From Vitrella brassicaformis CCMP3155 (Eukaryota > Protista > Chromerida): DNA of 64,000 nucleotides. How positions within the stretch are numbered: the first letter of the stretch is position 1; the number at the start of each line of letters is the position of its first letter. The stretch is taken from the NCBI GenBank assembly GCA_001179505.1, contig CDMY01000061.1:124001-188000 (forward strand). Direction: 5' to 3'. A program made the position numbers and the translations under genes. Below, one piece after another: positions 39,001 through 47,978 of the stretch. Under the pieces are notes generated by a model. That model was given only the letters and a program-made list of their open reading frames with translations, ran no database searches and had not been told where the DNA came from.

Positions 39001-42000
39001 CTCCTCTCACCCACCCCACCACCACCATCAGCACCAGCCACCACCCTGGTCTGCCACAGGGCGTCCCGGACCTCAGCCGCACGCAGGAACGACACTGCTG
39101 CATCGTCTCTCTTGGTGCTCGGCGAGGGCATGGCTGCCGAGATGAGGTAGGCCGCCATGTCCACCGACAGCCGCCTTGACCCACCTCCTCCACCTGTTGG
39201 CGCGTCTGAGCTCCCGTGTGGGAACTGCATGAGCCGCACGGCCGCCTCCACCACCACACACTCGGGCATGGCCGGCCATAGCACCGGGGTGCTGCTGCTG
39301 CTGGTGGCGGCGGTGGTCTCCTTGCTGTCCCTTCTGCTGGTGGTGGTGGTGCTACGGTGGAGTGCCGACGGCGGTGTGCGGTTTTGGAAGACGATGGCCA
39401 CTCGTGTGCCGCCCATGCGGAGCCGCGCAGAGGGGATGGAAGGGGGCTGTTGGTGTTTGGGGCTGCCTGTGGGGGGTGGTGGTGTTGGCTCGAATAGTCG
39501 GATGTTGAGAGTGTGTTTGAAGCCGTGGGCGGCGGGCTGCCGGTGAAGGTGCCAACACGCGCTGGAGCCCTGGTCTGCTCACACACACACACACACACAC
39601 ACATGCACACATGGATGAACGGGATGCGTGCAGCGAGACGTGTGTGCATGTGTTGTGTTGCATGTGATGTGTCTGCACATCCTAGGTGAAGTGAGTACCG
39701 TACCCATGGGTACGTTGTCTCTGTTGAAGAAGACTGATGCGGGTGAGGCCTGGATGAGGGACGGCTCGCCCAACACTATGGTGCCGTCGTCAGACAGCCT
39801 GAGCACACCACACCATAAGTGCATCCGGACAGGCCAGACGGATGTAGGCAACGGCCTGCCCACCTGACCTGGTTCTTCCAGCCATGAGCAGCGGCACGGA
39901 CGACAGCCCCCTCATGCTGGCAGACACCTCAAACCCATTGGACCTGACCACACACACACACACCCATCCCTCGGTCCACCCATCAATGGTCGCTCCCCCA
40001 AGACGCGCAGACAGACGTACATTAGCCGCACACTGAAGTGCTCCACGTGAGACGACAGAGGATTCACCACACCGGTCCCTGCCGCTGCTGCTGCTGCTGC
40101 GTCCGTCTCTGTCTGTGTCTGTGTCTGTGTCTGCGTCGGAGCGGTATGTGCGCACGCACCCCCACCGTCGGCATCATCCGCCACCGCCCGGGCCGCCCGG
40201 TGCCACGCCACACGCTGCAGGCTGTCCTGCATCGATGTGGGTGTGGTGCTGTCGTCTGGAGGGGACGACAGCAGGGGCCAAGCCTCGTCCAGCAACACTT
40301 GGAAGAAGAAACCTGATTAACCAACCCGGTTAAGTTGATGGCAGCAGGATGGGATGGGAATGTACTGTACTATACCTCCTCCGAGGAGGTAGAATGTCTT
40401 GAGTGCCTTGATGTGCTCCACCAGACCAGCCGCGTGCAGCAGACGCCATAGACGGTGAGCTACCTGATGCGGACACACACACGCACACACACACACACAC
40501 ACAAAATACACAATACACACACATATCAAGCCGACAAGAACAGGAGAGAGCAACTCGCACGCCCCATGCGCTGTGCGTTCGTTCACTCACCGCGGCCCTG
40601 AGCGTCTCGACAGTGTCCTCGAGCACTGCTACAGGCGTCATCTCGCCCTTGACGGCCACAGCAAACACATCACGCTAAGGACACACATGCAGACAGACAG
40701 GAAGCGAAGCTGATGATGCACACGCTCGCTATAGGCATGCTTGTGTACTGCTGCACCCGACCCGCACCATTTTGTCCAGTGTGGGCTGTATGTCTCGCAT
40801 GTCAGTGTGTCGCCAGAGGCCGCTGCGTCGGAGCACCCGCACGGCCTTGCCGATGAACAGCACCTGCAGGGCATTGCAGTCCGTACAGGTGGGGGGCGCG
40901 GCGCTACAGACATGTTGGTTGGTATCGATGCAGATCCACACACGGATGTACACCTACCTTTTTCGCCGTTGCGATGGAGACGCACGACGCCGAGGGGATG
41001 GCGTCGTATCGGAGGCCGAACATGTCGTTCCACTCGTAGCGACCGCACTGCACACAACAAACACGACAGACACCACACAGCACAGCACACCACAGCAAAC
41101 CAGATACAACCAAGGCATCATACAGCAGAACACATAGCCTTCCTTCTCTCCCTACCGCCCTCCCCGTCGCACACCTCTTTGCCTATCATTTCTCCATTGC
41201 CATCGGCCACCATCCCACCATCACCATCACCTCCAGAACCCCCTTTATCGCGGCAGCACCGGACGAAGAACTCTCCGTGTGGGTCGACGAGCTCCCCCCG
41301 CACCACCCAGGTCACCAGCTGGTACAGCAGCACCTCGCCCACTCCACTGAGCACTGACGCCAGCAGCGGGCGGCAGGGCGAGGGGGCCGTCCACCAGCCG
41401 TCCCATATCGTGTCCAGCAACGCGGCACCTGTGGACGAGGTGGCGGCTCCTCGGTCAGACCAACACACCTGGGGCGTGGCATGGCATGGCCAGGGAGGGA
41501 CGTGTTGTGTGTGGTGTGGATGCTGGTGTGGGTGTATAGGTGTAGGTGTGTGGGTCTCCACTCCATCTGTCCCTCCCTCACCTGTTGTGCCAGCGATCTG
41601 AGTGTCCTGATGGCGTGTGGTTGGTGCTGCAGCGCCACCGATATGTGCGAGAAGGGAAGGAGGGGGTCCTGCATGGCCATGATTGATTTCAATGTGTGTA
41701 CACCTGCCGGCTCTCGGCGATACCCATGCTGTTGTGTGCCTACCTCCAGGTACTGCTGCTCCAGGTCACAGACCTTCCGGTGGTACTCACGCAGGTAGGC
41801 CCCGATCTGCCGGGCCAGCGCCTGCACATACAGACCGGTGGGGGACACTCCATTTCCCTTGACACACAACCAGGGATAAACTTGATCTGGTGGACCACAC
41901 ACAAACACATATTCCATTCATCCATCCATCCATCGGGAGAGCTACCTGCCGCATGTTGATTCTCCTCTGAAGCCTGTGTGGCGGCTGTGACGAAGCTCTT

Positions 42001-42162
42001 GAGTGCGGCCACGTCAGCGCCTGTGGCCACGATAGATCCGATGAGCTCGCTCTCGCCCTTGGCCAGCGACTTGACGGCGGGGTTGACGACAAAACACTCG
42101 CCCTCTAGCTGAATTAAGTCACCCGGCACGCCCACGACTGCAAACAGAACCTCAGATATCAT
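36090..42162 (-). CDS. TUBGCP4: Gamma-tubulin complex component, most like GCP4 (Spc97/Spc98 family), many exons with low-complexity inserts
   Basis: MISEVLFAVVGVPG, GLYVQALARQIGAYLREY, LYQLVTWVVRGELVDPHGEFFV, LFIGKAVRVL, HIKALKTFYLLG, YLQQDVIE, DFEDIKRAHDTFL and LAQLLLRLDYNGY. Confidence 0.87.
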
Positions 42163-42345
42163 TTCGCTTGGGGCTGTAGGGCCGCAGGGTAGGGTTTCAG
42201 CAGCAGCGGTTTCAGGAAGCACCCTGGGGTCTTGAGACTGTTTCAGGCCTCGAGGCTGTTTCCCGGCCTCTGTTGATCGCTTTCCATCGCCCCCTATCGC
42301 TTCGAAAGGTCCTGTGTTGCTTATTTAGCCTATCGCTCGTCAGCC

Positions 42346-43132
42346 ATGGTCGAGACGCGCCCGAGGAAGCAGGGCCCAGAGTTCGACATCGGTGAGCCAT
42401 CGGGAAGGAAGAGAAGGAGTGCACGACGAGAACATGGGATGTGGCAATGGCGTCGTGTGGCGTTGGTGTGGTGCTGTGCTGTGCTGTCTCTGTGTGTGTG
42501 TGTGCAGAGGAGAAGGTGCCCTGCTTCTTCGACCCGAATCACATGGTGCCGAAGAGCAGACTCATGTACGTCCGTAGGCTGACTCACTGAATGACTGACT
42601 GGCATGGTGTCAGATGTGTGGTGCGTGTGGGCGATGCGATGCGATGTGATGTGATGTGAATATGTGGTATCATGTGGTATGGCTGACACTGTGTGGTGTG
42701 TGTTGTCTGTGTGCAGGTGGCACTACACCACCAAGTGTCAGGCCTACAAGTACATGAAGAACCAGGTCAAACGGTGCCCATACAACGTCCTCCACTGTAA
42801 GGAAGTGACGACAGACAGACAGTGACCGGCCGGCGATCCACTCACGCAGACAAGACAAGCAGACAGACAGAAAGGCGTTAAACCCCCCTCCCCACACCCA
42901 CACTTGTCCTGCCATGCGCGTGTCATTCCTCTCTCTCTGTCTTTGTGGATGTTGTATGGGTGTGTGCAGTCACACATACCGCCGTCGAGATGGAGCTGCA
43001 CAAGCGCACCTGCCCCGACCGGCCCAGGGACCGTTCCAACTACGCCGACACGTTCCAGAACAACACCACCAATGGAAGCACCAATGGCACCACCAATGGC
43101 AACAACAGTGACTGGTGGGTGTGGCTGACACA

Positions 43133-43163
<31 letters not shown>

Positions 43164-44230
43164 CAGATAGAAACCCGCAACAAGTCAACACACACCCCAT
43201 ATGGGCTGCCTGCCGTCTGTCTTCACGCATGATGTGCATACAGGGGCGATTGGGCCGGCGGCACCCCAAGCACCAACAGCAACGGCCGTGGCCGAGGCGG
43301 TGGTGGCGTGGGCGTGCGTGGGCGGGGCGGCTACCGCGGGGGTCGTGGGGACGGAGGCGGGCCACCTGTGCGCCGTGGCGGTTGGGATGATAGCAGTGAC
43401 GATGAGGAGGCTACCACTCGCGGCCCGCCCAGCATGTATGGGGCGGCCCGGAGTGAGTCGGGCTACGGTGACGGTGGTGCTGGTGACGACGAGGGCTACC
43501 CCGAGTCGGAGGCCGCCCAGACCGAGTTCCGCACGGCGCAGCAGGAGTTCCGCGGCAGCGATGGCAATAGCTACACCAACGACAACAGCTCGCAGTATTC
43601 GATCGTGGAGGTCTGCATGGCATTCACTGCCGACACGCAGACTGAATGACACGCGCACATATGCTCCCTCATGGGTGTGTTGTGTCGATTGGGTGGTGCG
43701 TGCAGGAAATTGCCGAGTTGCACGAGAAGGAGAAAGAGCTGCGCCAGAACATCCAGAAGGTCGGTGTGAGAGAGAGACCCCGGGAGGGAGAGAGGGAGGG
43801 AAGGAGGGAGGGAGGGAGGGAGGGAAGAGCCTACAGGCAGGCAGGCAGACTGGCAGACAGCGAGCCGCTCTGCGCATGAATGCACATCACATCACATCAC
43901 ATCCCGTGACAGATGGACGTCTGCCTGCCTATGAGTGGCGGAAAGTAAGGTGTGAATGAATGGATTGCTGCAGGTGGAGGCCATGGAGACGGATGCCGAG
44001 TTGGGCGACGTGCTCACTGAGGAGGAGCAGCGTATGGTGGACAGTAAGCACCATACCGACCACCACACACAGAGAAGGGCAGACAGACAGACAGGCGCAT
44101 GTGGCCATCCATGTCTGTGGTGGTACACGCGCGCGTGTCAGGTCGTGGAGAGCTTCAGGAAGAGCTGGACGAGATCACGCGGCGCATCCAGATGCTGCAG
44201 CTCGGCCAGAGGCAGCAGCGGGCGGGATGA
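42346..44230 (+). CDS. Tandem CHHC (U11-48K type) zinc-finger protein, GTSF1/Asterix-like, with WG/GW and RGG motifs and a C-terminal coiled coil
   Basis: Hand-spliced: CFFDPNHMVPKSRLMWHYTTKC-QAYKYMKNQVKR-CPYNVLHFTHTAVEMELHKRTC, then SDWGDWAGG, RGRGG/RGG runs, GGWDD, an acidic stretch and a heptad-like tail ending QRAG*. All junctions are GT-AG with consistent phase. Confidence 0.8.
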
Positions 44231-45050
44231 ACCCGATAGACACACACAGAAATAAGATGCGGCAAACAAGCAACACACACACATACACAAGTGAATGCAC
44301 CGAAGTAGGTATCGACTGAGGGAGGGAGGGAGGCAGGAGAGAGGGAGGGGGGCAGGGCAGGGCAGGGGCAACCTTGCGGCAGAGCAGCGACAGCGGTCTC
44401 TGTTTGTTGTGTGGGCAAATGACATGCAGTCAGTGACTCACTCACTCACTGTGTGTACACTGATAATTGGCCTGCGGATGGATTGATTGATGGATGGGTG
44501 GGTGGGTGGATGGGTGGGTGTTGTTGTGGCTGTCTGTCCGTCTGTCTGCCTGCCTTTTCCCCTGTCTGTCGCTTGTATAGCACCAGGTGTCTGCTTCTCT
44601 CTCTGTCCCGTTGGTTGGCTGGTTGGCCGCTGTTGCGATCGATAGATACGATCCACATTTCATCACCACCGGTCCGTTCACTTTTGACGGCCTGCCTGCC
44701 TGCCTGCCTGGATGGATGGATGGATGGACGCGTTTCCCCGTGTGCTAGTAGCGATATGACCTCGGTGAATGTGATTGTGTGTGGACTGCTGCTGCTACTG
44801 CTGCTGGTGCCATGAAGGAATCCATCCAGTATATTCAGTCCACCACATGAGAACATACCTACGCATCGCATCCATCGTCCATCCGTGTGTGCACGAAATC
44901 CTCGCCGGCATCTACACAACCGCTACACAAATCTGACTTGCCTGACCTATCGATGACAGACACACCTGTATGTCTGTCTGGACTACCCATTGCCGCCGTA
45001 GAGCAGTCTGCTGACCATGAGGCAGCTGAAACCACCCCCCACACACGCAC

Positions 45051-46103
45051 CCAGATGGCGGCAATGAGAAGGGTCGAAGTTGACCTCCACGCAGGCACCC
45101 TCTGCTATCCCCACAGCCGGCCGCACCTCGCCCTTGACCCCACTGATTGTTGCAGAGTCGAGCGCCTTGCCGTTGAGACGGAAGGCAAGCCGAGTAGGGA
45201 TGTCGGACTGATCAAACGTGCAGGACTGCGCACAACAAACAAACAAGGACACGACCACGTCCATACAAGCCAAGCAGGAAGGAAGATTTGCGTGGGGTGG
45301 CGGGTGTGAGTGCATATGGGCTTACAATGACGTCGTCAGGTGCGACGGGGATGCCACCCTGCACGCCGAATGCCCTGGCCCAGCTCATGACGCCATCGCC
45401 AAACCCACCGGCCCCTCTCCCATCTCCATCTGCCGCCAAATTCTCCAGGTAGTCGCCCACGAGCTCCCTCGACACGCCCACGAGAATCCTGCCCACCTTG
45501 AGCACTCGTACCTCCCAATACACCTTCAAAGAACGGGCCGATCGGTATGCACACAAACACGCGTCAACCCCGTCCATCCATTTGTGTGGCTTGTGGCACC
45601 CAGTGTGTGCACCGGGTAATATGAATGACGGACGGCCCAAGCCCGTACCTTATCCTGGATGATCGGCACATTCGACAACACCACACCGCTGCCCCTCGCC
45701 ACACGGCCGTCCAGCAAGATCTGCGAACCGCGGGCACTGCATGGCATGCATCCAACGAAACACAGCACCAACCAACGAAGACCATGTTGTGTCAGTCAGT
45801 GCGGTATCTCCGCCTGCTGGGATCTTACCCGATGCGCACTACCGAGAGAGCCGATGCGGTGTCCCGGTCCCTCGGTGCTCCTCTGCGCTGCTGATGGCCA
45901 TCCCTCCCCTGACCTCCACCGCGCCTGCCGTTTGCTGATGATGGCGGATCCTCCCGCTTGGCTTTCCGTGCTGCTGCTGCCGCCGGTCTGTCTGCAGATC
46001 CTGACCCTGCATCGGTGATGTGCTTGATGAGGGATGTCACTGCCATGGCAGGGACGGAGATGAGCCAGTCGCACCGGCAGCAGTCGTAGAACGGGGACCA
46101 CAT
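45051..46103 (-). CDS. SPRY-domain protein, SPRYD7-like (last exon not resolved)
   Basis: N-terminal CCRC, then GSGVVLSNVPIIQDKVYWEVRV, GRILVGV and FRLNGK...SGVKGEVRPAV, resembling SPRYD7. Confidence 0.72.
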
Positions 46104-46402
46104 CACCACCACTATGCCGGATGTGTCAGCGGTGCAATTGCATCATCCAATCCAGAGTGATCTGCAGGGCGGAGAGAAGCGGGCGAGAGCAGAGAGGACG
46201 CGGATTATGTATCCGAAGTCTTTCTTGTTCTACCTTATCGACTCATTCCTCGTTCAGGCTTCGTTGGCGGAAAAACGGACGACTTCGGTCCCAGGCGCCA
46301 CCACTGCGAGCTTGAAGAGCCGATCATCCGGCGGCCAGATCAAGCCAGATCTCATCCACTGTCCAGTCGAGTGCTTCTTCCATCAACACTCGACTGCTGA
46401 CG

Positions 46403-47978
46403 ATGGTCCAGCTGCGCATCAAGAAGCGCAGCGGCGCCTACCTCGGTGCCATTGAGCTGCCGGCGACAGCATCCGTCGAGGAGTTCAAGAAAGAGTTCCA
46501 CCGCAGATGTGAGCAGAGAGAGAGGCGGGATCAGTCGGGGCATCAACGACACATGACCGATGCTGCCTCTGTGTCTGTGTGTGTGCTGTGCAGTCAAGTT
46601 CTATCCTGAGCGGCAGCGCTTCACAATCGGATCAGGTGCGCCAGCCAGCCAGCCACATGGACAAGGGGTCAGAGGCAACGGCAGATCGATCTGGGTGGGT
46701 GCATTGGATGTTTGGTGTGTGTTCAGGTAGCGGTCCGGCGTTGAAGGATGGGACGCTGCGCGACAACGGCATTGAGGAGACGGAGGAGGGCTACCTGCTG
46801 TTCTTCAAGGACCTGGGCGTGCAGATCAGCTGGCGGCTCGTGTTCGTCATCGAGTACCTGGGGCCGATTCTCATCTTCCCCATCTTCTACTGCCTGCCGC
46901 AGCTCATCTACGGCCAACCGGCGCCCAACAAGCACCTCATCCAGAAGTGGGGATGGGGATGCAACCATGACGTGCTGGAGGCCATTTATTGGCGACTTGG
47001 GGTCTGTGTGTGTTTGTGCAGGGTTGCGTTTTGTTTGGTGCTGCTTCACTACATGAAGCGGGAGCTGGAGACGCTGTTTGTACACCGCTTCAGCAACGCC
47101 ACCATGCCCATCATCAGACTGCCCATCAACTGCCTCCACTACTGGTATGAATGAAGAGCCCACTCACTGATTGCATGACTCACTCGCGGCACTGCCCGCA
47201 TCGCATCCATGGCGCGTGTGCGGTGCTTCTTTCGTTCAGGGTGTTGTTCGGCACAAGTGTGGGGTACTACCTCTTCCACCCCAAGTACACGGCGCCCGAC
47301 TGGAGCCCCCAGGCCGTATACATACTTGCCGCACTCATGATGGTCAGCAAGACAGCACCACACGTACACACCAGCGAAAGGCGGCTGTATGTGTTCTTGT
47401 TGGTCAGGTGTGCGAGTTGTTGAATCTCAAGACCCACTTGATCCTCAGGAACCTCAGGCCAAAGGGCACCAAAGCAAGGGGCATTCCCAAGGTGAAACGG
47501 ACATCATACTGATGGTCGTCCACACGTCAATGCATTGGCGTGTGTGTTGTGACCGGTCAGGGTTGGGGTTTCCAGCTGGTGTCGTGCGCCAATTATTTCT
47601 TTGAGAGCCTGGCCTGGGTGTTCTTCGCCGTCATGACTGGCACACTCACCGGTCGGCACTCAAGTGACACTGACAGGCAGACCGACATGTGTCGACACAG
47701 CCCTTTGCATGTGTACCTTCTCTCTCTGTGTGTGGGCGTGTGTGTCAGGTTGGGTGTTTCTGGCGATAGCGTTCCTCCAGATGGCCGACTGGGCCATCAA
47801 GAAGCACCAGAGATACCAAGCCGAGTTTCCTGACTACCCAAAGTCAGCAGCGAAAGATCTACCTACCCACACAGAGCACACAAACGTGTTGACCCGTGTT
47901 GCTTCCTCTGTACGTGTCTGTGTCACTGCGTGTGTGGCGTGCAGGATCCGCACGGCCATCATTCCCTTCATTCTGTGA
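46403..47978 (+). CDS. TECR: Very-long-chain enoyl-CoA reductase (TECR/Tsc13)
   Basis: Ubiquitin-like N-terminus (YPERQRF), then KDLGVQISWRLVFVIEYLGP, HYMKRELETLFVHRFSNATMP, LVSCANYFFESLAW, QMADWAIKKH and RTAIIPFIL*. Confidence 0.96.

What the first reader, a model, noticed from the sequence alone, without database searches (positions are those of the whole stretch)
42346..44230. GTSF1/Asterix-like tandem CHHC zinc-finger protein with Argonaute-hook-like WG/GW and RGG motifs
Seen: no single ORF shows this protein. Splicing exons 1-4 builds two adjacent CHHC fingers at the N-terminus (CFFDPNH-x9-H-x4-C, a 12-residue linker, then CPYNVLH-x10-H-x3-C). These are followed by DWGDWAGG, RGRGG/RGG repeats, GGWDD, an acidic tract and a coiled coil. 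Established: two N-terminal CHHC fingers plus Trp-containing disordered regions define GTSF1/Asterix, a PIWI cofactor in transposon silencing described in animals and ciliates. WG/GW motifs are Argonaute-binding hooks, and RG repeats are methylation and Tudor-binding sites. Inference: this may be a small-RNA silencing cofactor in a non-ciliate alveolate. The added RGG, GW and coiled-coil modules could couple it to an AGO-clade rather than a PIWI-clade partner.
Basis: partly seen in the sequence, partly recalled or inferred. Interest (0 to 1): 0.8.

Follow-up and report, generated by a model that had tools for sequence, protein, structure and literature searches.

The report
GTSF1-like double zinc-finger gene in Vitrella
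This is a real, expressed eight-exon gene of the alga Vitrella brassicaformis for a protein of the GTSF1 family (two CHHC zinc fingers and a floppy tryptophan-bearing tail), a family known as helper of PIWI silencing proteins in animals and ciliates; it is a new member of a known family and its partner here is untested.

Summary
An 8-exon, all GT-AG model (42346-44230, +) gives 302 codons in frame. All seven introns appear as exact joints in spliced contigs of three runs from two studies and in a JGI transcript contig (L001).

The N-terminus carries two CHHC fingers with all eight zinc ligands and a 12-residue linker. Pfam zf-U11-48K passes its cut-off. The best solved relatives, by sequence and by predicted fold, are GTSF1 structures across both fingers; U11-48K matches one finger, far more weakly. 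No TRM13 methyltransferase part was found.

Relatives include a Vitrella paralog (CEL99304.1), Chromera, the apicomplexan Rhytidocystis, ciliates, an amoeba and animal GTSF1.

Tryptophans in acidic or small-residue context after finger 2 are a trait of the whole family, not an added Argonaute hook. The RGG box is specific to this paralog. The C-terminal "coiled coil" is predicted as a helical hairpin. It weakly resembles an eIF2A/PYM-like tail motif that I found in other GTSF1-like proteins.

An AGO-clade partner is unsupported. The scan had no earlier GTSF1 or CHHC note. Verdict: new member of a known kind, of moderate interest.

The parts
42070..42345 (+). 5' UTR (minimum extent)
   Evidence: Spliced contigs reach back to 42194-42232. 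Transcript contig L001 starts at about window 42070. Its 5' end overlaps the first coding exon of the divergent GCP gene.
42346..42391 (+). Exon 1 (ATG; residues 1-15 plus the first base of codon 16)
   Evidence: joint 42391|42508 in X1, X2 and X6.
42508..42565 (+). Exon 2 (residues 16-35; first half of CHHC finger 1: C21, H27)
42717..42796 (+). Exon 3 (residues 35-62; H37 and C42 of finger 1, the 12-residue linker, C55 and H61 of finger 2)
42970..43114 (+). Exon 4 (residues 62-110; H72 and C76 of finger 2, N/T/G-rich spacer, start of DWGDW)
42522..43013 (+). Tandem CHHC zinc-finger domain (C21 to C76; interrupted by introns 2 and 3)
   Evidence: Pfam PF05253 at 26.5 bits, cut-off 21.1. GTSF1 6x46 at E 1.4e-5. 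All eight ligand columns are invariant or at least 90% conserved in 62 relatives. AF2 pLDDT is 93-96 over residues 21-80, and the top fold hits are 6x46 and 9nhc_E.
43244..43610 (+). Exon 5 (residues 110-232). It holds W110/W113 (DWGDW), the RGG box at about 43287-43382, W157 (43383-43385), an acidic tract, the conserved GPPSMYGAA-x-SE-x-GYG motif (43422-43469), and the start of the C-terminal helices.
   Evidence: The motif is shared with the paralog. The tail is predicted disordered up to P0001 residue 73.
43706..43759 (+). Exon 6 (residues 233-250)
43974..44043 (+). Exon 7 (residues 251-274)
44142..44230 (+). Exon 8 (residues 274-302 and the TGA stop)
43587..44227 (+). C-terminal helical hairpin (residues about 225-259 and 266-301; interrupted by introns 5-7). 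It is a possibly diverged eIF2A/PYM-like tail motif at residues about 240-284.
   Evidence: AF2 gives helices at 74-108 and 115-150 of P0001 with pLDDT above 90. An HMM of eight other tails scores it 10.4 bits, against 7.4 for the best of 4000 shuffles. hhalign gives E 0.0024.
44231..44308 (+). 3' UTR (minimum extent)
   Evidence: Contigs of X1 and X2 end at 44308. L001 ends at about the same place.

Best explanation
The locus is an expressed, eight-exon gene of Vitrella brassicaformis. It encodes a 302-residue member of the GTSF1/Asterix family of tandem CHHC zinc-finger proteins.

Shown here:
- the splice model;
- two complete CHHC fingers with a 12-residue linker;
- a GTSF1-like predicted fold;
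- a disordered tail with Trp in an acidic or small-residue context at the place where animal GTSF1 carries its PIWI-binding Trp;
- a paralog-specific RGG box;
- a C-terminal helical hairpin.

Inferred: the fingers bind structured or target RNA, helped by the RGG box. The Trp-bearing tail docks on a partner of the small-RNA machinery. The most likely partner is one of the PIWI-type Argonautes reported for this genome. An RdRP, as for nematode GTSF-1, is the alternative. The protein would then act as an RNA-dependent cofactor or adaptor of silencing. The helical hairpin would serve self-association or a further contact.
For: Splicing: seven exact GT..AG joints in three runs of two studies, with the unspliced form in a DNA-like run, and the transcript contig L001 and product P0001.

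Domain: Pfam zf-U11-48K at E 6e-6, 26.5 bits against a cut-off of 21.1. phmmer against solved structures gave mouse GTSF1 6x46 at E 1.4e-5 over residues 13-92 (both fingers), GTSF1 9nhb at 0.014 and U11-48K at 0.26. A family profile gave GTSF1 at 4e-21 against U11-48K at 9e-8. AF2 gave pLDDT 84.8, and the two best Foldseek hits are GTSF1 structures (prob 0.99 and 1.00) with the next hit about 100-fold weaker.

Family: there are 70 hits at E<=1e-3, and nearly all real ones carry two CHHC fingers 10-16 residues apart. They include proteins named GTSF1 in turtles and in the sea spider Nymphon.

Tail: 38 of 60 relatives have Trp within 60 residues after finger 2, with D, E, S or G as neighbours. 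In mouse, W98/W107/W112 bind PIWI and basic residues of finger 1 bind RNA (PMC9385479). R33 and K41 here align with mouse R29 and K36.

Pathway context: earlier notes of this scan report Dicer, PIWI-type Argonautes and three RdRPs in this genome. I did not check them. GTSF1 works with PIWI in Paramecium (PMC11602119, PMC11724296) and with the RdRP RRF-3 in nematodes (PMC13650160).
Against: No interaction, localisation or small-RNA data exist for Vitrella. Nothing on Argonaute in Vitrella was found in the paper library.

Only finger 1 reaches Pfam significance on its own. Only two of the four mouse RNA-binding positions are basic here.

The protein has 302 residues, nearly twice a typical GTSF1. 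It is expressed in ordinary cultures rather than in a sexual stage.

Paramecium has further tandem-CHHC proteins that did not co-purify with its PIWI (PMC11602119, PMC11724296), so family membership does not prove the partner.

The domain tree has 80 columns, is poorly resolved, and has no U11-48K or TRM13 outgroup. The Argonaute inventory comes from unchecked notes.
Confidence: 0.55

Rival explanations
1. It is a tandem-CHHC RNA-binding protein that works outside Argonaute pathways, for example on tRNA, ribosomes or translating mRNPs. The RGG box and fingers would bind RNA, and the C-terminal hairpin would be a diverged eIF2A/PYM-type tail.
For: A profile of the tails of eight other GTSF1-like proteins matches the C-terminus of human eIF2A at E 3.7e-8. 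This protein aligns with that motif without gaps, at the same C-terminal place. The eIF2A-like tail of human PYM mediates 40S association (PMC4072592). Mouse GTSF1 binds tRNA (PMC9539491). Paramecium has tandem-CHHC proteins that were not found with PIWI (PMC11724296). The gene is expressed in ordinary cultures.
Against: The match of this protein to the motif is weak: 10.4 bits, hhalign probability 12%, and no direct hit to eIF2A. It has lost three of the five invariant motif residues, namely the two Lys and the Gln. The hairpin is acidic rather than basic, which argues against rRNA binding. Every experimentally studied family member acts in small-RNA pathways.
Confidence: 0.28
2. One reading: GW/WG hooks plus RGG and a coiled coil couple this GTSF1-like protein to an AGO-clade rather than a PIWI-clade Argonaute.
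For: Three Trp lie next to Gly or Asp in a disordered stretch. Such contexts resemble Argonaute hooks (general knowledge).
Against: The Trp motif is a family-wide trait that animal PIWI-binding GTSF1 shares. There are only three Trp, and only one position is kept in the paralog. In a Gly-rich stretch, Trp next to Gly is expected by chance. GTSF1 does not stimulate mouse AGO2 (PMC9385479). The scan's notes describe PIWI-type Argonautes in this genome, not AGO-clade ones.
Confidence: 0.08
3. It is the Vitrella ortholog of U11-48K (minor spliceosome) or of TRM13 (tRNA 2'-O-methyltransferase).
For: The Pfam family that matches is named after U11-48K. One finger aligns with U11-48K.
Against: The protein has two fingers with GTSF1 spacing. 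U11-48K matches one finger only, at E 0.26 against 1.4e-5 for GTSF1. No methyltransferase or other Pfam domain is found in any exon or in the tail. None of the 70 relatives has the U11-48K or TRM13 layout.
Confidence: 0.03

Closest known systems
GTSF1/Asterix (mouse GTSF1, PDB 6x46; Bombyx GTSF1 in the SIWI-piRNA-target-GTSF1-Maelstrom complex, PDB 9nhc)
   Same: Both have two N-terminal CHHC fingers with all eight ligands and a short linker. These are the best matches by sequence and by fold. Both have a disordered tail with Trp in acidic context about 25-40 residues after finger 2.
   Different: This protein has 302 residues rather than about 150-190. Finger 1 starts CFFDP, not CPY[DN]. It carries an RGG box and a C-terminal helical hairpin. 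Only two of the four mouse RNA-binding basic positions are kept. The partner is unknown, and the protein is expressed in vegetative cultures.
Paramecium PtGtsf1 (PIWI/PRC2-associated; PMC11602119, PMC11724296)
   Same: Both are alveolate tandem-CHHC proteins with an unstructured tail. PtGtsf1 is the only protist member with a tested function.
   Different: It comes from a different alveolate branch (ciliate versus chromerid). PtGtsf1 acts in sexual development and genome elimination, which Vitrella is not known to have.
C. elegans GTSF-1 (RdRP RRF-3 cofactor; PMC13650160)
   Same: It has the same tandem CHHC family layout. Vitrella is reported to have RdRPs, so an RdRP partner is possible.
   Different: Nematode GTSF-1 lacks the RNA-binding basic residues and binds through its fingers. 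No evidence here favours RdRP over PIWI.
Vitrella paralog CEL99304.1 (UniProt A0A0G4EPE5, 'CHHC U11-48K-type domain-containing protein'), Chromera Cvel_30038, and Rhytidocystis GHVS01076898
   Same: These are the nearest relatives (SH-aLRT 85 clade). The paralog shares the whole layout: 46% identity in the N-terminal part, the GPPSMYGAA motif, the helical tail, and matching exon lengths in the finger region.
   Different: The paralog has a finger 1 shortened by two residues (CFFGH), no RGG box and one Trp, and it does not reach Pfam significance. It lies on another scaffold without synteny.
eIF2A / PYM C-terminal motif (human eIF2A, PDB 8dys residues 550-599)
   Same: It has the same length and helix-Gly-helix pattern at the extreme C-terminus. 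The link runs through tails of GTSF1-like proteins of Blepharisma, Mayorella and others (E 3.7e-8).
   Different: This protein's version is acidic and keeps only the Gly and Leu positions. Its similarity is weak and is not enough for membership.

Membership tests
GTSF1/Asterix (tandem CHHC) | Two CHHC (zf-U11-48K type) fingers near the N-terminus with all eight zinc ligands | tested here: met
   C21, H27, H37, C42 and C55, H61, H72, C76. These columns are invariant or at least 90% conserved in 62 relatives. Pfam PF05253 scores above its cut-off, for finger 1 only.
GTSF1/Asterix (tandem CHHC) | Short linker between the fingers (about 10-16 residues) | tested here: met
   The linker is 12 residues, the most common value among the hits.
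GTSF1/Asterix (tandem CHHC) | Closest solved relatives by sequence and fold are GTSF1, over both fingers | tested here: met
   6x46 at E 1.4e-5 over residues 13-92, against U11-48K at 0.26. The Foldseek top two are 6x46 and 9nhc_E.
GTSF1/Asterix (tandem CHHC) | Unstructured tail with aromatic (Trp) residues after finger 2 that bind the partner | tested here: inconclusive
   The sequence feature is present: W110 and W113 lie 34 and 37 residues after C76, and W157 follows. The tail is predicted disordered. Binding itself cannot be tested with these tools.
GTSF1/Asterix (tandem CHHC) | Basic RNA-binding ridge on finger 1 (mouse R26, R29, K36, K39) | tested here: inconclusive
   In the HMMER alignment R29 aligns with R33 and K36 with K41. 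R26 aligns with P30 (K31 is adjacent), and K39 falls in a gap.
GTSF1/Asterix (tandem CHHC) | Small protein (under about 20 kDa) | tested here: not met
   The protein has 302 residues. Other hits in the family are also long (209-370 residues), so this is a soft criterion.
GTSF1/Asterix (tandem CHHC) | Physical and functional association with a PIWI-clade Argonaute (or RdRP in nematodes) | not testable with these tools
   No multimer prediction and no interaction data were available.
U11-48K (SNRNP48) | A single CHHC finger in a protein of about 340 residues with a U11-59K-binding region | tested here: not met
   This protein has two fingers. U11-48K aligns with one finger only, at E 0.26 and Foldseek rank 14.
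TRM13 | CCCH and CHHC fingers followed by a methyltransferase domain | tested here: not met
   There is no Pfam match other than zf-U11-48K in the exons, in the N-terminal 135 residues or in the C-terminal 151 residues.
GW/WG Argonaute-hook proteins (GW182 type) | Many GW/WG repeats in a disordered region, conserved among orthologs | tested here: not met
   There are only three Trp, and one place is kept in the paralog. The pattern is that of the GTSF1 family tail.
eIF2A/PYM-like C-terminal motif | Lys-rich helix, invariant Gly, then Leu, Gln and Lys positions at the extreme C-terminus | tested here: inconclusive
   The alignment is ungapped over 46 columns: HMM 10.4 bits (best shuffle 7.4), hhalign E 0.0024 with probability 12%. 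Gly and Leu are kept; Lys13, Gln35 and Lys38 are lost. There is no direct hit to eIF2A.

The most novel reading that the evidence does not exclude
GTSF1-like proteins may ancestrally have carried an eIF2A/PYM-type C-terminal helical motif. In human PYM that motif mediates 40S association. It is still present in ciliate, amoebozoan and some arthropod members, and in diverged, acidic form in the two Vitrella paralogs. If so, the ancestral GTSF1 linked RNA recognition by small-RNA effectors (PIWI or RdRP) to ribosomes or translating mRNAs. The Vitrella gene would then be a handle on an unexplored silencing pathway in the algal relatives of apicomplexan parasites.
Probability: 0.15. Interest if true: 0.7.

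Novelty: new member of a known kind. Interest (0 to 1): 0.4.

Why it matters
RNA silencing in chromerids, the free-living algal relatives of apicomplexan parasites, is essentially unstudied. The paper library holds nothing on Argonaute in Vitrella.

An expressed GTSF1-family gene sits alongside a paralog and relatives in Chromera and in the apicomplexan Rhytidocystis. This suggests that a GTSF1-type cofactor goes back at least to the common ancestor of these lineages. It gives a concrete protein to test as a PIWI or RdRP partner outside animals and ciliates.

The full product was not found in the public protein collections searched, so the gene may be missing from the current annotation.

The eIF2A-like tail motif in other family members appears undescribed in the papers searched. 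It could point to a link with ribosomes.

Tried and rejected
- An exon-by-exon Pfam scan gave nothing, because both fingers are split by introns.
- A word search with the N-terminal 135 residues gave no hit in the 74-236 residue range.
- A word search with exon 5 found only the partial JGI product P0001.
- A word search with the paralog P0072 found only its own cluster, not this gene's product.
- P0001 alone against solved structures gave no eIF2A hit and nothing significant.
- Pfam on the tail motifs gave nothing.
- Rfam on 40000-46500 gave no match.
- There is no synteny between this locus and the paralog's scaffold.
- TRM13 and U11-48K orthology were rejected on architecture and scores.
- The 'Ago hook' reading was rejected as a distinct feature, because the Trp pattern is family-wide.
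- The neighbours are a divergent gamma-tubulin complex gene upstream, and downstream an ORF with no Pfam match. They give no functional hint.
- The chromerid genome paper has no mention of Argonaute, Dicer, PIWI or RNAi.

Joined step left out. I never joined the exons into a full-length protein for any search or fold. The spliced N-terminus was taken by reference from the natural transcript contig L001, which has a 10-N gap at 684-693. The C-terminus was taken from P0001. Residues 136-151 were covered only by the exon 5 reference.
Full report
**Observation**

The stretch 42346-44230 on the + strand contains no long ORF for this protein. Eight segments bounded by GT..AG join in frame into a CDS of 909 nt, i.e. 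302 codons plus stop. The exons are 42346-42391, 42508-42565, 42717-42796, 42970-43114, 43244-43610, 43706-43759, 43974-44043 and 44142-44230.

I checked each exon by reference in its own frame.

**Transcript evidence**

Eight public runs hold the stretch. Two of them (X1, X2) hold 0.42 of its sampled words, which is about the exonic share.

I laid four runs on 42100-44700. Contigs of X1 and X2 (study P1) and X6 (study P4) skip exactly 116, 151, 173, 129, 95, 214 and 98 bases, with GT..AG ends, at the predicted borders. X3 carries the unspliced genomic form. The kind of each run is a guess on record, but spliced forms beside an unspliced DNA form show transcription and splicing.

One X6 contig (44016-44171) keeps intron 7. 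This is either retained intron or DNA.

A JGI transcript contig of 1286 nt (L001) carries the fully spliced mRNA, with a 10-N gap at 684-693. Its called product P0001 (151 residues) shows the joins of exons 5 to 8. So the refutation test 'transcripts do not join these exons in frame' fails, and the model stands.

**Domain identity**

An exon-wise Pfam scan finds nothing, because intron 2 splits finger 1 and intron 3 splits finger 2. I therefore took the natural spliced N-terminus by reference (L001:278-682, 135 residues).

- **Pfam:** it matches zf-U11-48K (PF05253) at E 6e-6 and 26.5 bits, against a cut-off of 21.1, through finger 1.
- **Solved structures, single sequence:** the best hit is mouse GTSF1 (6x46, E 1.4e-5), aligned over residues 13-92 and so over both fingers. 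Then come GTSF1 of the SIWI complex (9nhb, 0.014) and U11-48K (0.26, one finger).
- **Predicted fold:** AlphaFold2 on residues 1-95 with 62 relatives gives mean pLDDT 84.8, and 93-96 over residues 21-80. Foldseek ranks 6x46 and 9nhc_E first (prob 0.99 and 1.00). All other hits are about 100-fold weaker, and U11-48K is a single-finger match at rank 14.
- **Other domains:** no methyltransferase or other domain is present. TRM13 and U11-48K are therefore rejected.

**Relatives**

The exhaustive search with residues 1-95 found 70 proteins at E<=1e-3. Apart from a few repetitive false hits, all carry two CHHC fingers 10-16 residues apart, most often 12.

- **Named members:** turtle GTSF1, a sea-spider 'Gametocyte-specific factor 1', two Blepharisma (ciliate) proteins, a Mayorella (amoebozoan) transcript, Chromera Cvel_30038, and a transcript of the apicomplexan Rhytidocystis.
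- **Best hit:** P0002, E 1e-23, is Vitrella brassicaformis CEL99304.1.
- **Organism:** earlier follow-up notes of this scan name the window's genome as Vitrella brassicaformis. That fits the identical transcripts in two strain-labelled runs of one study. CEL99304.1 is therefore a paralog.
- **Paralog locus:** it lies on another scaffold with no synteny. Its exon lengths in the finger region match.
- **Paralog sequence:** its transcript form (P0072) is 46% identical over the N-terminal 131 residues and 32% over the tail. It has the same layout.
- **Tree:** a quick maximum-likelihood tree of 80 columns groups the two Vitrella proteins with Chromera and Rhytidocystis (SH-aLRT 85). It is otherwise poorly resolved and has no outgroup.
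- **Family profile:** it hits GTSF1 at 4e-21 and U11-48K at 9e-8. It contains animal GTSF1 sequences, so this mainly shows what family the hits form.

**The tail**

- **Trp motifs:** However, Trp within 60 residues after finger 2 occurs in 38 of 60 family members. The Trp frequency there is 2.05%, and the neighbours are mostly D, E, S or G. Animal GTSF1 shows the same pattern. In mouse GTSF1, W98, W107 and W112 bind PIWI, and the protein does not stimulate AGO2 (PMC9385479). The Trp stretch is therefore best read as the family's partner-binding tail, not as an added module. The paralog keeps one Trp at this place.
- **RGG box:** the box at residues about 125-156 is absent from the paralog. It is a plausible extra RNA-binding or methylation site (inference).
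- **Conserved motif:** a short motif, GPPSMYGAA-x-SE-x-GYG, is conserved between the paralogs even at the DNA level. Its function is unknown.

**The C-terminus**

AlphaFold2 on P0001 alone predicts residues 1-73 as disordered. It predicts two long helices (74-108 and 115-150 of P0001, pLDDT above 90) separated by a short turn. This is a hairpin rather than one long coiled coil.

Nine other family members share a C-terminal motif of the type KK-L-K-x-I-x-x-L...G-x-x-L-x-x-x-Q-x-x-K...EL. They come from Blepharisma, Mayorella, Nymphon and unnamed protist transcripts.

A profile of eight of them, without the Vitrella proteins, matches the C-terminus of human eIF2A at E 3.7e-8. The eIF2A-like tail of human PYM mediates 40S association (PMC4072592). 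No paper in the library connects GTSF1 with eIF2A.

The Vitrella protein aligns to this motif without gaps and at the same place, but only weakly:
- HMM score 10.4 bits, against 7.4 for the best of 4000 shuffles.
- hhalign E 0.0024, probability 12%.
- No direct hit to eIF2A.
- It keeps the Gly and Leu positions but has lost both invariant Lys and the Gln, and it is acidic.

I therefore record this as a lead, not as membership.

**Mechanism**

Shown: the gene, its expression and splicing, the tandem CHHC fold, and the family.

Inferred from the family:
- The fingers bind RNA. R33 and K41 align with mouse R29 and K36, while the other two RNA-binding positions are not conserved.
- The Trp tail binds a partner of the small-RNA machinery.

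Unchecked notes of this scan report Dicer, PIWI-type Argonautes and three RdRPs in this genome. PIWI is the partner in animals and Paramecium. The RdRP RRF-3 is the partner in nematodes, and it has been proposed that GTSF1-like proteins may regulate RdRPs more widely (PMC13650160).

Paramecium also has tandem-CHHC proteins that do not co-purify with its PIWI (PMC11602119, PMC11724296). A role outside silencing therefore remains a serious rival.

**Novelty**

- GTSF1 orthologs 'in some protozoans' are mentioned in a review (PMC9539491), and two Paramecium studies give function.
- UniProt already labels the Vitrella paralog as a CHHC U11-48K-type domain protein.
- Among the 15 top-ranked papers of the search that paired GTSF1 with chromerid, apicomplexan or dinoflagellate terms, none mentions GTSF1.
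- The full product of this gene was not found in the protein collections, neither as a 100% hit nor through the paralog query. It may be unannotated.
- The scan had no earlier GTSF1 or CHHC note.

This is a new member of a known kind. It has two unusual additions (RGG box, helical hairpin) and one side lead (the eIF2A-like tail in the family).

**Limits**

- No full-length joined protein was searched or folded.
- No U11-48K, TRM13 or PtGtsf1 sequence was held for a rooted tree.
- The Argonaute and RdRP inventory was not checked here.
- The kinds of the runs are guesses on record.

Noticed in passing
P0016, P0018, P0029, P0042, P0048, P0054, P0070, P0071 (C-termini); P0030 residues 259-300: A subfamily of GTSF1-like tandem-CHHC proteins ends in a helical motif whose profile matches the C-terminus of human eIF2A (8dys_A 550-599) at E 3.7e-8. 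It includes the ciliate Blepharisma, the amoeba Mayorella, the sea spider Nymphon and unnamed protist transcripts. The same kind of tail mediates 40S association in human PYM. No paper in the library links GTSF1 and eIF2A.
   Followed up: partly
window 42346-44230: The full 302-residue product was not found in the 5.8-billion protein collection (query with the paralog, which shares a 9-residue word). It was also not a 100% hit in the representative library. Only a partial JGI product (P0001) exists, so the gene may be missing from the public Vitrella annotation.
   Followed up: partly
L003:6001-7342 (Vitrella scaffold CDMY01000277.1); L002: There is a second GTSF1-like gene in Vitrella (CEL99304.1). 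The public 241-residue model differs from the transcript-derived 256-residue product P0072 by a longer N-terminus and an internal segment of 10 extra residues (VGEGGQQPPE). Finger 1 is two residues shorter (CFFGH). The protein does not reach Pfam significance.
   Followed up: partly
window 41121-42162 (-): The divergent upstream neighbour is a gamma-tubulin complex component. GCP_N_terminal matches three consecutive exons. The transcript contig L001 of the zinc-finger gene starts at about 42070, inside that gene's first coding exon. Either the two 5' ends overlap, or an unstranded assembly merged them.
   Followed up: partly
P0010 (Rhytidocystis sp. ex Travisia forbesii, TSA GHVS01076898): An 827-residue transcript product from an agamococcidian apicomplexan carries the same CFFDP-type finger 1 and groups with the chromerid proteins. 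Host contamination was not excluded.
   Followed up: no
window 44016-44171: One contig of run X6 runs through intron 7 unspliced, while another contig of the same run is spliced there. This is retained intron or DNA in the library.
   Followed up: no
window 42600-42665, 43124-43171, 43779-43861, 44480-44520, 44700-44725: The introns and flanks are full of short tandem repeats: (GATGT/GATGC)n, (AC)n, (GGGA)n and (GGAT/GGGT)n. The read tool skipped several of them as repeats.
   Followed up: no
window 46579-47154 (+): A downstream ORF contains HYMKRELETLFVHRFSNATMP, which from memory looks like a steroid 5-alpha-reductase or enoyl-CoA reductase type membrane protein. Pfam gave no match at E<=0.01 for this exon alone.
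   Followed up: partly
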